The position numbers and the translations under genes were made by a program. Positions 39,001 to 48,845 of a DNA stretch of 64,000 nt are shown piece by piece (the first letter of the stretch is position 1; every line of letters starts with the position of its first letter). The notes below the pieces were generated by a model. That model was not told where the DNA came from, made no database searches, and saw only the letters and a program-made list of their open reading frames with translations. Source of the DNA: Piromyces finnis finn. Taxonomy: Eukaryota > Fungi > Neocallimastigomycota. The stretch is taken from positions 62,001 through 126,000 of the forward strand of contig MCFH01000035.1 of assembly GCA_002104945.1 (NCBI GenBank). Reading direction: 5' to 3'.

Positions 39001-40007
39001 ACAAGTTAATTAAAACACCTTATCACATAAAATATAATAATACACAAATACATTTTATCATTATGGCATTTATTAAATAAATCAGATTAATAATAAAAAA
39101 AAATTTAATATTACAAACTAACAATTGTACTTAAAAAAGGAAACACAATATTTTAAAATAAAGTAACAAAGAAATTTAATAATAATAACTATAATAAAAT
39201 AGTATATATAAAAAAAAAATTAATAAAAATTAATAAAAAAATATCAAAAACTATAAACTAATTATAAAAGAATTTAAATTTATTAATAAAGGACAATTAA
39301 AAAATATATAAAATGATATATCATATTATAAAGCTATCTTTACATAAAAAGAAAGAAAGGTCTTTTTCAATAGAAAAAAATTATCGTTTTATATTTTTTA
39401 TCTTATTAACAATAATAACAATTAAATAGGATATAAAAATTATTAGAATTTTATCATATTATATTAAGTTTGGTTTTAATTATTTTAACAAATAGAAATT
39501 TATGGTTAATTTACCTCTAACAATTATAAAAATGTCATTAATATAAGGTCAATGAAAAACTATGTATTTTCTACTTTTGATCTGTAAAAATAACCTCAAT
39601 TTGAGAAATAATATAATTATATATATTATTAATTTCTTATTTAAATAATGTTTTTTTTTTAAAAAAAAAAAAATTATCTTATATTTAAAATTTTCATACA
39701 AAATTTGGATGGTTATCTTTAAATGTGATAAAAAAAAATGAATGATTAACACAATTTTATAAGATAGTAATCTATATAGATAATTAATTTTTCATTATAT
39801 ATATTATTTTGTTTAGTTTTGCTTTTTTTATTTATTAAAGTTCATGTTTTAATGTTAAACTTTAATTTTTTTTTATTATATTATATAAATATATAAATCA
39901 TTTTATTTTACCTTTAAAGTTTTTTATTTTACTTCATAGTATCATATTAGAATTGTTTTTTATTAAATTTGCAAATTTTTAATCTATAGATTATATGATT
40001 CAAAATT

Positions 40008-42481
40008 ATGGACAATAGTCAAAAAAATTCAGTCAAAAGAATACATCAAATATTAAATCATTTAACTGACGCGAATACAGAATGTATATTTTAAATAAAA
40101 TAAATTAAAATATTAATAATATAATATTATAACTTTTTAAATCACCTTAAAAAAATCTTCATTTAAAAATAATGATAATAATTTAACACAACCCCTTTTA
40201 TTATTTTATGCTGAATAATCTTTTAAAACTATCAAAACATAGCATCAACTTTTGATAATGTTTATTTTGCCCCAAAAGATGCAATTTTTTCATTATCCTA
40301 TGACTATGAAATGGATCCAGCGTCACAAAAAATTGATATAAGTGTTGGAGCCTATCGAGATGAAAATGTATATCATATCTTAATTATGTAATATAATACA
40401 AAAAATAATTTCTAATGATTATTATTAATATATATATATATATTTTATGTGATATTTAAATTTTGAACTATGAATTATCATGATTATGATAACATGATAT
40501 TTTAAAATAAACATCTATTAAATAAAATGAATACAAAAATCACTTTATTCACTATTATGAAAAGGGAAAACCATGGGTATTACCAGTAGTAAGAAAGGTA
40601 TTTCATTCCTACACAATTGCTATTATCAAAAAAATTATATATATATATAAGATTTATATTCAATATATAATAAATAATTTTTAAAAGTGAGACATATTGT
40701 TAATATATATATTTGTTATAATAATACAAAAGGCAACGAAAATGGTAATTTCAGATCCAAATTATAATCATGAATATTTGTCAATGATAGGTGATCGAGA
40801 ATTTACAACATCAGCATTAAAATTGATTTTAGGACCTGATAATCAATCAATATTGGAAAATAGAGTAAAAAAAAAAAAATAAAATAAAAATACATTTTTA
40901 ATGATAATAACATAGAATCAATATTCACATGTTTTGATATAATAATTAATAATTATTTAATAATAAAACAACAATATAGGCAAGTGGAATTCAAACAATT
41001 TCTGGAACAGGTGCTCTACGATTATGCTGTGAATTCTTAAAGAAATTTACCACTAATAAAATTTACATTTCAGATCCAACATGGTGTAATTGCTCATTAT
41101 TTAATATATCATTAATATTATTATAATTTATTATAAAAGAAGAGACTATTATAAAACTATATTTGTATTATTTATGATATATTTATATTATTATTCTCAT
41201 TATAATTCACATTATTATTAATTAGCAAACCATATTAGGATTATTGAAGAAGCTGGTTTAGAATATGATTATTATTACTATTGGGATAAAAATGAAAAAA
41301 AAATCAATATTGATAAATGGATAGAAACAATTAAAGTATATATATATATATGTATTAATAATGAAGTAATAAATTTTAGTACAATTATTCTTAGAAATTT
41401 TATTTTTATATATTTATTTCTTAATCATTTAAAGAATGCACCTGACCATTCTGTATTTTTAATGCATGCATGCGCACATAATCCAACTGGAATGGATCCA
41501 ACTTCTGAACAATGGATAAGGATTCGAGATGCAATGATAGTAAATTTACTATTTAATATAATAAAAAAATTAAATATTTTTGCAAATAGTATTTATTATT
41601 ATAATACTTTTTCATATAAGTAAAATCAACTTCTATGTCAATAATATGCTTTTTTGCTAGGTTAAACAACATATACCATTATTTGATTGTGCGTATCAAG
41701 GATTTGCTAGTGGTGACCTTAATAGAGATGCTTTTGCTGTTCGACTTTTTGCAAATTCAAAATTCGAAATGTTTGTTGCTCAATCATTTTCAAAGAATTT
41801 AGGATTGTATAGTGAACGCTGTGGGTGTCTTTCTATGATATGTAACACAACTAGTGCTATGGAACGCTGTCGATCACAGTTAGCTTACATTGCTAGAGCT
41901 CACATATCTAATCCTCCTGCATTTGGTGCAAAAATAGCAACTCTAATTATAAATACACCTGAATTATATTATGAATGGTAAAAGAATGAAAATAATTTTC
42001 ACAAAATTTATATATCTTCAAAATTTATAATAAGAAAAAAAATAAATATGTATATCATATTAAATTTTTTATATATTTATATTATTGAATAATAGGGAAG
42101 AAAATCTTGCTGTAATGTCAGGAAGAATAAAACAAATGCGTAAAAGATTTTATAATATTTTACTAGATCTTAATACCCCAGGTAACTGGAAACATATCAT
42201 TGAACAAATCGGGCCATTTTGTTACACGGGTTTAACAAGTAAATTATTTAAAATAGAGCAGATTTAAAAATTTACAACAAATCATTTATTATTTAAATTT
42301 CTATTAATTAATTTTTTTTTTCTTTAATATCAATTTAATAGAAAAACAATCCATTACTTTAAGAGAAAAATTCCATATATATTTAACAGATTCTGGTAGA
42401 ATATCCGTTACCGGTTTAAATGATAGTAATATTCGATATTTCGTAGAATCATTCGATTGGGTAGTTAGACACATCAATTAG
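40008..42481 (+). CDS. AAT2: Aspartate aminotransferase (cytosolic/peroxisomal type), multi-exon, N-terminal PTS2
   Basis: [54 protein letters not shown]-lysine motif [21 protein letters not shown]. Exon 1 (40008-40083) joins exon 2 (from 40243) in frame. Confidence 0.93.
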
Positions 42482-42841
42482 GAAAATATAAAAAAAAATA
42501 AATCATAATTCATATTTAAATTTTTTTGAGTATTTTCAAAATTTTATAAAATAAAAAATACTTATATAAATAATAATGTATTAAATGGAATTTTTATTAT
42601 TTTATATCGTTTAGTTTTATTGTATCTTATATATATTAATAAAAATTGAAAGACTACATCTTTTCATTATAATTTATCTTTATTGAGTATTTTAATTATA
42701 TATATATATATATCAAAGAGTAAATATTAACGAAAATATTTATTACAATTAAAACATTTTATATTTAAAAATCACTTTTTTATAAATAACAATTATTCAA
42801 TTATTATTTATATTTATATATATTTATAAATAATTGTTGTC

Positions 42842-47753: not shown

Positions 47754-48845
47754 TTACTTCTTTCCATTAACCTTAATCCATTGAGCACGTGCACCTAAAA
47801 TAGAACTAGTAATACCGAATAAACCAAGGTAAAGTGGATCAATTTTGTAGAAACCTAAGGATGATATTGGGTGAACGAAATCACAGAAGTGTTGAGTTAA
47901 AGTTAAGTAGTGGTTTCTCTTTTTAACAAGAAGATTCTTAAGATCATCAGCATTTCTCTTTTGGATTTCTGGATCCTTTTCATCAGATGGAGTAACATTA
48001 GTAATAGAAGCAATCTTTTCAGTAGTCTTCTTTAATTTGAAAGATTCGTTAATGATACCACAAATGATACCAATAAACCAGAATCTTTGAGCATTCTTAG
48101 TAATTTGCTTAATATTTTCTTGCTTTTTAACACCAGATTTGTGGAACCAAACCATCATATCGAAAGTGAGGTAAATAGTATAGGCAAGGTTACGACCAAG
48201 GAGACAATATTTTGATAAATCGTCCTTTGCAGTTAAAGTCTTGTAAAAAGTGTTAGCGTGTTCTAATGGCTTACCAATACGAACAACTATAGTTTAAAAA
48301 TATGACATTAATACATATTCATATAATAATTTCTTCATTATTAACTACTTTATATATACTTACATTTACGAGATAATTGAATGTTCTTAATTACATTTCT
48401 AATCCAAGCAATGGTTTCTTCCTTACCATTGTATTTGATATTGTAGGCAAGAAGGAACTTGAATGTATGTTGTAAAGTTCTATATTTTTTATTTAATATT
48501 AAAATATATTATTATTATTTTATTTTTAAATAATACTATAATATTTTTAATAAAATTATCATTACCTATTAACCTTGTCACGACCAGTAGTGGTATTGAT
48601 GTACTTGAAGAACTATTTTAAAACATTTAAAATTAAGATATTATATATTATTAATAAAAGAAATAATAAAATTCATTTTTAAAAAAAATATTTTAAAGAT
48701 CTTTATAAGAAACTTCTTTATATATCAATTTGGTAAATAATTATCATATAAAATATTTCTATTTCATCTAAATTTTAGTCTTCTTTTTTTCAATATACAT
48801 ATTTTATAAACTTACTTGATTAACTAAAATTTGAGCGTTAGACAT
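47754..48845 (-). CDS. PEX11: Peroxisomal membrane protein Pex11, 4 exons
   Basis: Spliced: FFKYINTTTGRDK..RTLQHTFKFL..LSRKLFRIGKPLEH..TFDMMVWFHKSG..AQRFWFIGI..HFCDFVHPISSLG..LGLFGITSSILGARAQW. This follows the Pex11 family pattern. Confidence 0.9.

What the first reader, a model, noticed from the sequence alone, without database searches (positions are those of the whole stretch)
40008..40250. Hidden first exon gives aspartate aminotransferase a canonical PTS2
Seen: ATG 40008 reads [25 protein letters not shown]. It splices (GT 40084, AG 40241-2) in frame to [15 protein letters not shown], the start of the catalytic fold. This exon is too short to appear in the ORF track. Known: the PTS2 consensus is R-[LIVQ]-x-x-[LIVH]-[LSGA]-x-[HQ]-[LA], and RIHQILNHL matches at every position. 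Peroxisomal AAT takes part in a malate/aspartate redox shuttle in yeasts. Inference: Pex7-dependent import into a peroxisome-like organelle in an obligately anaerobic, hydrogenosome-bearing fungus.
Basis: partly seen in the sequence, partly recalled or inferred. Interest (0 to 1): 0.75.

Follow-up and report, generated by a model that had tools for sequence, protein, structure and literature searches.

The report
Peroxisome address tag on gut-fungus aminotransferase
The short first exon is real and gives an aspartate aminotransferase of the anaerobic gut fungus Piromyces finnis a conserved peroxisome-import tag (PTS2), which suggests these oxygen-free fungi still import enzymes into peroxisomes; the exon is already in the public gene model, and such tags on fungal aminotransferases are known.

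Summary
ATG 40008 opens a 76-nt coding exon. Spliced cDNA contigs from 4 public runs (3 studies) join 40083 directly to 40243, exactly as predicted. All ten exons translate to the public protein ORX46376.1 of Piromyces finnis (428 aa), so the exon is short but not hidden.

RIHQILNHL (residues 11-19) is the only strict PTS2 match in the six-frame translation of the window. About 5e-5 would be expected by chance in this exon. It lies in a 26-residue extension ahead of the solved AAT fold.

The orthologues keep R-I-x-x-I-x-x-H-L while the flanks drift. A second gut-fungus paralogue clade carries an invariant RIALIASH[LF]. A third clade (407 aa) has no extension. N-terminal R[LIV]x5[HQ][LF] is widespread in fungal Aat2-type enzymes, so the tag is most likely ancestral and retained. 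PTS2 on fungal Aat2 is published (PMC6099311).

An intact-looking PEX11 lies about 5 kb away. I could not test PEX7, because no referenced seed sequence was available.

The scan has already noted PTS2 on pyruvate formate-lyase and citrate synthase, and PEX5, PEX7 and PEX39-like genes, elsewhere in this genome; I did not check those notes.

Verdict: a new member of a known kind, in an interesting setting. The papers I could search do not describe peroxisomes in anaerobic fungi.

The parts
39915..40007 (+). 5' untranslated region, minimum extent
   Evidence: cDNA contigs begin at 39915 (X1), 39936 (X2), 39950 (X3) and 39974 (X4) and run without a break to 40083 (table 8).
39995..40018 (+). Short out-of-frame upstream ORF (7 codons plus stop) that overlaps the main start
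   Evidence: Read from the sequence. Its context is weak (T at -3, A at +4), against A at -3 and G at +4 for ATG 40008.
40008..40083 (+). Coding part of exon 1: 25 codons plus the first base of a split Ser codon
   Evidence: Identical to residues 1-25 of ORX46376.1. Joined to 40243 in cDNA contigs.
40038..40064 (+). PTS2 nonapeptide RIHQILNHL (residues 11-19)
   Evidence: Only strict-consensus match in the six-frame translation of the window. R, I, I, H and L are invariant in 7 distinct orthologue N-termini.
40084..40242 (+). Intron 1 (159 nt, GTATAT...TAG)
   Evidence: Skipped in the cDNA contigs of X3 and X4, with matching lengths in X1 and X2. Intron 2 uses the same GTATAT donor.
40243..40367 (+). 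Exon 2, start of the AAT fold ([16 protein letters not shown]...GAYRDEN)
   Evidence: Contig pieces 40243-40367. Solved AAT structures align from residues 27-29 of the protein.
40565..42481 (+). Exons 3-10 with the stop codon: 40565-40597, 40733-40864, 40980-41085, 41226-41335, 41435-41539, 41661-41977, 42096-42238 and 42342-42481. The C-terminus is ...VVRHIN, with no PTS1.
   Evidence: Pfam PF00155. Exon translations match P0122 in order.
47757..48293 (-). Large exon of a PEX11 gene (peroxisome division factor). Supporting context, not part of the AAT gene.
   Evidence: Pfam PF05648 PEX11, E=1.4e-37, profile positions 59-222 of 222. Candidate upstream exons were seen.

Best explanation
This is the already annotated Piromyces finnis gene for an Aat2-type (cytosolic-family) aspartate aminotransferase, ORX46376.1. 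Its 76-nt first coding exon adds a 26-residue N-terminal extension to the enzyme, and that extension holds a type-2 peroxisomal targeting signal, RIHQILNHL.

Shown: the exon is transcribed and spliced in frame. The extension lies outside the catalytic fold. The key signal residues are held constant in several gut-fungus lineages and in a second paralogue clade, while the flanks change.

Inferred: the signal forms the usual short helix that the WD40 receptor Pex7 binds, with a Pex20-type co-receptor. This paralogue is thereby imported into peroxisomes that work without oxygen. There it interconverts aspartate plus 2-oxoglutarate with oxaloacetate plus glutamate, probably as part of an amino-acid or redox shuttle across the peroxisomal membrane. 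The extension-less third paralogue (407 aa) would serve the cytosol. The tag is most likely inherited from the fungal ancestor rather than newly gained.
For: Splicing:
- The 40083|40243 join is present in cDNA contigs of 4 runs from 3 studies.
- The same exon 1/exon 2 join occurs in a cDNA contig of another species, L010, which reads KRINQIVNHLTDTDTE-S-SHFDN.

Identity:
- All exons match ORX46376.1 [Piromyces finnis].
- Pfam PF00155.
- The best solved relatives are cytosolic AATs at E=3e-125. They align from residues 27-29, so residues 1-26 are an add-on.
- The catalytic motifs are kept in that alignment: SFSK, AYQGF, HNPTG, R-x3-SNPP and GRIS.

Motif:
- It is the only strict match in the window, against about 5e-5 expected in this exon.

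Conservation:
- Clade A reads [36 protein letters not shown] and RINLIGNHL, with variable flanks.
- Clade B reads RIALIASH[LF], unchanged behind leaders of 4 to 22 variable residues.
- The invariant Ile codons differ synonymously between species: ATA, ATC and ATT.

Phylogeny:
- The three gut-fungus clades form one group (SH-aLRT 97), arranged as A with (B, C) on a midpoint-rooted tree. In an alignment cut before the signal, 61 of 125 fungal relatives carry R[LIV]x5[HQ][LF].

Context:
- PEX11 lies in the window.
- Gut-fungus transcriptomes were reported to contain peroxisomal import machinery (PMC5168858).
- Most fungal Aat2 proteins carry PTS1 or PTS2 (PMC6099311).
- AAT is predicted in the anaerobic peroxisomes of Pelomyxa (PMC8887013).
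Against: - No localisation data exist.
- I did not verify PEX7, a Pex20-type co-receptor, PEX13/14 or a peroxisomal malate dehydrogenase in this genome. The scan notes that claim PEX5 and PEX7 are unchecked.
- The TCDB-based 'peroxisomal import' hits in PMC5168858 include generic WD40 and E2 proteins, so they are weak evidence.
- In several orthologues position 6 of the motif is V. This lies outside the strict consensus, although it fits R[LI]x5HL.
- Hansenula polymorpha Aat2 reaches peroxisomes without Pex7 (PMC6099311), so AAT import does not always use this route.
- Clade A sits on a long branch (0.76 changes per site), so its exact substrate preference could have shifted.
Confidence: 0.7

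Rival explanations
1. The motif is a relic. It was inherited from aerobic fungal ancestors, but gut fungi no longer import PTS2 proteins, and the enzyme stays in the cytosol.
For: Many anaerobic eukaryotes have lost peroxisomes (PMC4690255). [quoted passage not shown] PEX7 was not verified here.
Against: An unused 9-residue motif should decay. Instead its key residues are invariant in two paralogue clades and several genera, while neighbouring residues and leader lengths vary freely and the conserved Ile codons differ synonymously. A separate extension-less paralogue already covers the cytosol. PEX11 looks intact in the window.
Confidence: 0.12
2. The extension works as a different signal. It could be a hydrogenosomal (mitochondrial-type) presequence, or it could direct Pex7-independent, Pex20-type import as in Hansenula Aat2.
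For: Gut fungi import many enzymes into hydrogenosomes. H. polymorpha Aat2 uses Pex20 without Pex7 (PMC6099311).
Against: The leader has acidic residues at positions 2-6 in all orthologues (MDNSQK, MDDSQE, MDDFSEQ), no Arg/Ser/Ala-rich amphipathic stretch, and a net charge near zero. That is unlike mitochondrial-type presequences (judged by eye from established knowledge; no predictor was run). H. polymorpha Aat2 lacks any PTS2, whereas here the PTS2 positions themselves are what is conserved.
Confidence: 0.08
3. The match is a chance occurrence in an AT-rich exon, or exon 1 is an artefact of gene prediction.
For: AT-rich genomes encode many I/L/N/K-rich peptides. Two looser R[LI]x5HL matches occur elsewhere in the window in non-genic frames.
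Against: The expected number in this exon is about 5e-5. The splice is seen in cDNA from three studies and in a second species. The motif is conserved in orthologues.
Confidence: 0.01

Closest known systems
Fungal Aat2-type aspartate aminotransferases with PTS1 or PTS2 (S. cerevisiae Aat2 has PTS1; filamentous ascomycetes carry PTS2 and/or PTS1; Kiel et al. 2009, as cited in PMC6099311)
   Same: Same enzyme family. The best solved relatives are 6jpk and the yeast enzyme 1yaa. The protein groups with fungal Aat2-type sequences. The N-terminal R[LIV]x5[HQ]L sits at the same place, just ahead of the fold.
   Different: The host is an obligate anaerobe with hydrogenosomes. The gene has triplicated: two PTS2 forms and one form without a tag. 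There is no PTS1, and no internal Met that could give a second, cytosolic isoform from this gene.
Plant peroxisomal/glyoxysomal aspartate aminotransferase with PTS2 (Arabidopsis and tomato AAT, RLx5HL; PMC9328179)
   Same: An N-terminal PTS2 on an AAT. It is thought to work with malate dehydrogenase in redox and carbon exchange across the peroxisomal membrane.
   Different: This is another kingdom, and whether the tag has a common origin was not tested. Plant PTS2 leaders are cut off by DEG15 near a Cys (from my own knowledge). No Cys follows the signal here, and processing was not tested.
Anaerobic peroxisomes of Archamoebae (Mastigamoeba, Pelomyxa, Entamoeba; PMC8629394, PMC8887013)
   Same: Peroxisomes kept in anaerobes. 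They hold malate dehydrogenase, and in Pelomyxa a predicted AAT. The Pelomyxa study (PMC8887013) reports Pex7 there and the same peroxin set in Mastigamoeba.
   Different: Those organelles were shown by proteomics and microscopy. For gut fungi I found only sequence-level hints. The lineages are unrelated.

Membership tests
Aspartate aminotransferase, class I aminotransferase fold (Pfam PF00155, cytosolic/Aat2 type) | Full-length similarity to solved AATs and to the family profile | tested here: met
   PF00155, E=4.9e-71 over residues 54-419. 6jpk E=3.2e-125 and 1yaa E=2.5e-124, aligned from residues 27-29 to residues 425-427 of the 428.
Aspartate aminotransferase, class I aminotransferase fold (Pfam PF00155, cytosolic/Aat2 type) | PLP-binding Lys (SxSK) and the substrate and cofactor residues (Asn in HNPTG, Asp and Tyr in D-x-AYQGF, Arg before SNPP, Arg in GRI) | tested here: met
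   All are present and aligned to the same residues of 6jpk in the printed alignment. Enzyme activity itself was not tested.
PTS2 cargo protein | Nonapeptide R-[LIVQ]-x-x-[LIVH]-[LSGA]-x-[HQ]-[LA] within about the first 40 residues | tested here: met
   RIHQILNHL at residues 11-19. Only strict match in the window; chance about 5e-5.
PTS2 cargo protein | Signal conserved in orthologues while the flanks vary | tested here: met
   R, I, I, H and L are invariant in 7 distinct clade A N-termini. RIALIASH[LF] is invariant in 10 clade B N-termini.
PTS2 cargo protein | The organism has the receptor Pex7 and a co-receptor | not tested
Scan notes s1-190451 (PEX7) and s1-183669 (PEX39-like) claim such genes but are unchecked.
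PTS2 cargo protein | Pex7-dependent import into peroxisomes | not testable with these tools
   Needs a reporter assay or organelle proteomics.
Mitochondrial/hydrogenosomal presequence | Basic, amphipathic N-terminus without acidic residues | tested here: not met
   Asp at position 2, and Asp or Glu at positions 3-6 in some orthologues. Judged by eye; no predictor was run.
PEX11 (neighbouring gene, context only) | Match to the PEX11 family profile | tested here: met
   PF05648, E=1.4e-37, for window:47757-48293:-.

The most novel reading that the evidence does not exclude
Anaerobic gut fungi (Neocallimastigomycota) keep working peroxisomes beside their hydrogenosomes. They send two different aspartate aminotransferase isoenzymes into these peroxisomes by the PTS2 route, as part of an oxygen-independent amino-acid and redox exchange. 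This would be the first anaerobic peroxisome described in fungi. It would also revisit the 1990s debate about whether the 'microbodies' of Neocallimastix were peroxisome-like.
Probability: 0.55. Interest if true: 0.6.

Novelty: new member of a known kind. Interest (0 to 1): 0.42.

Why it matters
Peroxisomes are usually thought to be lost, or to have no role, in strict anaerobes. Anaerobic peroxisomes have so far been shown only in Archamoebae. In the papers I could search, peroxisomes of gut fungi are mentioned only as an open question (PMC5168858).

A PTS2 tag held under clear purifying selection on two AAT paralogues, next to an intact-looking PEX11, indicates that the import route is still in use. 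It also supplies a ready-made test cargo for localisation work in these fungi, which matter for biomass conversion.

On its own, though, this gene is an ordinary member of the PTS2-tagged fungal Aat2 family and is already correctly annotated.

Tried and rejected
Exons were searched one by one by reference. Full-length searches used natural contiguous sequences instead: the cDNA contig L010:112-1377 and the public protein P0122.

2. The word search with exon 8 alone found only exon-sized fragments because of its length window. It did lead to one orthologous genomic contig that includes exon 1 (L001).

3. The metagenome scan gave one close relative, L010, which is chimeric at its 5' end. The other 79 loci are AATs only 51-58% identical, from other organisms, and were not used.

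4. PEX7: no referenced seed sequence could be obtained. The one inspected looks like a generic WD40 protein, so the TCDB label is not proof of Pex7.

5. Literature searches for peroxins or peroxisomes together with Neocallimastigomycota, Neocallimastix or Piromyces found no study of gut-fungus peroxisomes beyond one hedged sentence. The Mastigamoeba PNAS paper is not held.

6. The big representative search, structure prediction and fold search were not used, because the protein's identity was never in doubt.

7. Contig pieces that map inside intron 1 (around 40168-40183) run on into unrelated sequence. I took them for AT-rich cross-matches, not intron retention.

Full report
**Observation**

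The window is AT-rich (19% G+C). At 40008 an ATG opens the reading [25 protein letters not shown]. One further base (t, 40083) is followed by GTATAT. After the acceptor AG at 40241-42, 'ca' completes a Ser codon and the frame continues [15 protein letters not shown].

ATG 40008 is the first in-frame ATG after a stop, with A at -3 and G at +4. The only upstream ATG (39995) is out of frame, has a weak context and ends after 7 codons.

I laid the contigs of four public runs from three studies on 39300-42780. They are spliced, so they derive from RNA. In X3 record 3 and X4 record 4, position 40083 is followed directly by 40243. The X1 and X2 contigs have exactly the expected number of letters between 40083 and 40729. 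The 5' UTR reaches back to at least 39915. This join is read from the contig pieces; the joints table dropped rows next to a skipped repeat at 40084-40117. Six of the other introns appear there as GT..AG joints, and the remaining two junctions fit the contig lengths.

The reads corrected my first count: exon 2 ends at 40367.

**Identity**

Taken one by one, the exons hit Pfam PF00155 and solved aspartate aminotransferases.

A metagenome scan with exon 8 returned a natural spliced cDNA contig of a related species, L010. Its frame 112-1377 is a complete AAT. Using that contig as the query, the word search returned P0122, 'PLP-dependent transferase [Piromyces finnis]' (ORX46376.1, 428 aa). All ten exon translations of the window occur in it in order, with the split codons in between.

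So the window is Piromyces finnis, an anaerobic gut fungus, and the first exon is already part of the public gene model. It escapes only an ORF list.

P0122 aligns to solved cytosolic-type AATs at E=3e-125, from residues 27-29 onward. The catalytic Lys and the other active-site motifs are in place. Residues 1-26, which are exon 1, form an extension in front of the fold. The C-terminus (VVRHIN) is not a PTS1.

**Is the motif more than chance?**

The strict PTS2 pattern occurs once in all six frames of the window, at 40038. Shuffled windows give 0.35 matches, or about 5e-5 for the 17 positions available in this exon.

**Conservation**

Distinct orthologue N-termini were recovered from Neocallimastix californiae/lanati, from unnamed gut-fungus transcriptomes and from a genomic contig, L001. 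They read [36 protein letters not shown] and RINLIGNHL. Positions R1, I2, I5, H8 and L9 never change, while the residues before and after the motif do. The invariant Ile codons differ synonymously between species (ATA, ATC, ATT).

A second paralogue clade includes P. finnis ORX60077.1, N. californiae and Piromyces sp. E2. It carries RIALIASH[LF] unchanged behind leaders of 4 to 22 variable residues. A third clade (P. finnis ORX55412.1, Anaeromyces, Neocallimastix; 407 aa) starts directly at the fold.

I built a maximum-likelihood tree on an alignment cut before the signal. It groups the three gut-fungus clades together (SH-aLRT 97) as A with (B, C) under a midpoint root, and clade A sits on a long stem.

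Among 125 fungal relatives, 61 carry R[LIV]x5[HQ][LF] at the N-terminus. They include chytrids, Mucoromycota, Glomeromycota and some Dikarya. The simplest reading is an ancestral fungal PTS2 that was kept in two of three gut-fungus paralogues and lost in the cytosolic one.

**Context**

A PEX11 gene lies about 5 kb downstream on the other strand (Pfam PF05648, E=1.4e-37). This tests and agrees with scan note s1-186124.

Other notes of this scan claim PEX5, PEX7, a PEX39-like gene, a DEG15-type protease and PTS2 on citrate synthase and pyruvate formate-lyase in the same genome. I could not check them and use them only as leads.

I could not test PEX7 myself.

**Literature**

- Most fungal Aat2 proteins carry PTS1 or PTS2 (PMC6099311, citing Kiel et al. 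2009).
- Plant AAT carries RLx5HL (PMC9328179).
- Anaerobic peroxisomes with malate dehydrogenase, and in Pelomyxa a predicted AAT, are known in Archamoebae (PMC8887013, PMC8629394).
[quoted passage not shown] The supporting table rests on loose TCDB matches.
- Searches that combined peroxin or peroxisome terms with gut-fungus names found nothing further.

**Mechanism**

Shown:
- A transcribed, correctly spliced first exon.
- A 26-residue extension outside the fold.
- A PTS2 under purifying selection.

Inferred:
- Binding by Pex7 and a co-receptor.
- Import into oxygen-independent peroxisomes.
- Transamination there as part of an amino-acid or redox exchange.
- The untagged paralogue serving the cytosol.

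**Rivals**

- An unused relic. This is unlikely, given selective conservation in two clades.
- A hydrogenosomal or Pex7-independent signal. The leader is acidic at its start, and the conserved residues are exactly the PTS2 positions.
- Chance or annotation artefact. Refuted.

**Verdict**

The gene is a new member of the known PTS2-tagged Aat2 family and is already annotated. Its interest lies in the organism, as one of several sequence-level hints that anaerobic gut fungi keep working peroxisomes.

Noticed in passing
window:47757-48845 (- strand): PEX11 gene. The large exon 47757-48293 matches Pfam PEX11 (E=1.4e-37). Small upstream exons read MSNAQILVNQVSL and ...TTTGRDKVNR. The full exon model and its expression were not worked out.
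   Followed up: partly
window:42838-43015: Long (ATT)n microsatellite, about 60 units, roughly 350 nt downstream of the AAT stop codon.
   Followed up: no
window:39995-40018: Seven-codon upstream ORF that overlaps the AAT start codon out of frame. Its context is weak, so scanning ribosomes probably pass it.
   Followed up: no
L010:1-111 and L010:1484-3241: The JGI contig Ga0138317_1005011 is a chimeric transcript assembly. Unrelated sequence replaces the first 10 codons of the AAT. A second ORF of 585 aa with PNGPEPN repeats follows the AAT.
   Followed up: no
P0129 / P0135 (other P. finnis loci, not in the window): P. finnis has three Aat2-type paralogues. ORX60077.1 (431 aa) has an invariant PTS2, RIALIASHL. 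ORX55412.1 (407 aa) has no extension. The same trio occurs in Neocallimastix.
   Followed up: partly
P0164, P0166, P0169, P0175 and other Mortierellomycota proteins: Mortierella-type Aat2 proteins read RLQQIS[NS]HI, with Ile instead of Leu at the last PTS2 position. This may be a lineage-wide variant of the signal.
   Followed up: no
window:38767-39000 (+ strand): An ORF just upstream of the AAT gene (MDYLASLKKLPFAVQGYGQYF...) looks by eye like the last exon of a proteasome beta-type subunit. It was not tested.
   Followed up: no
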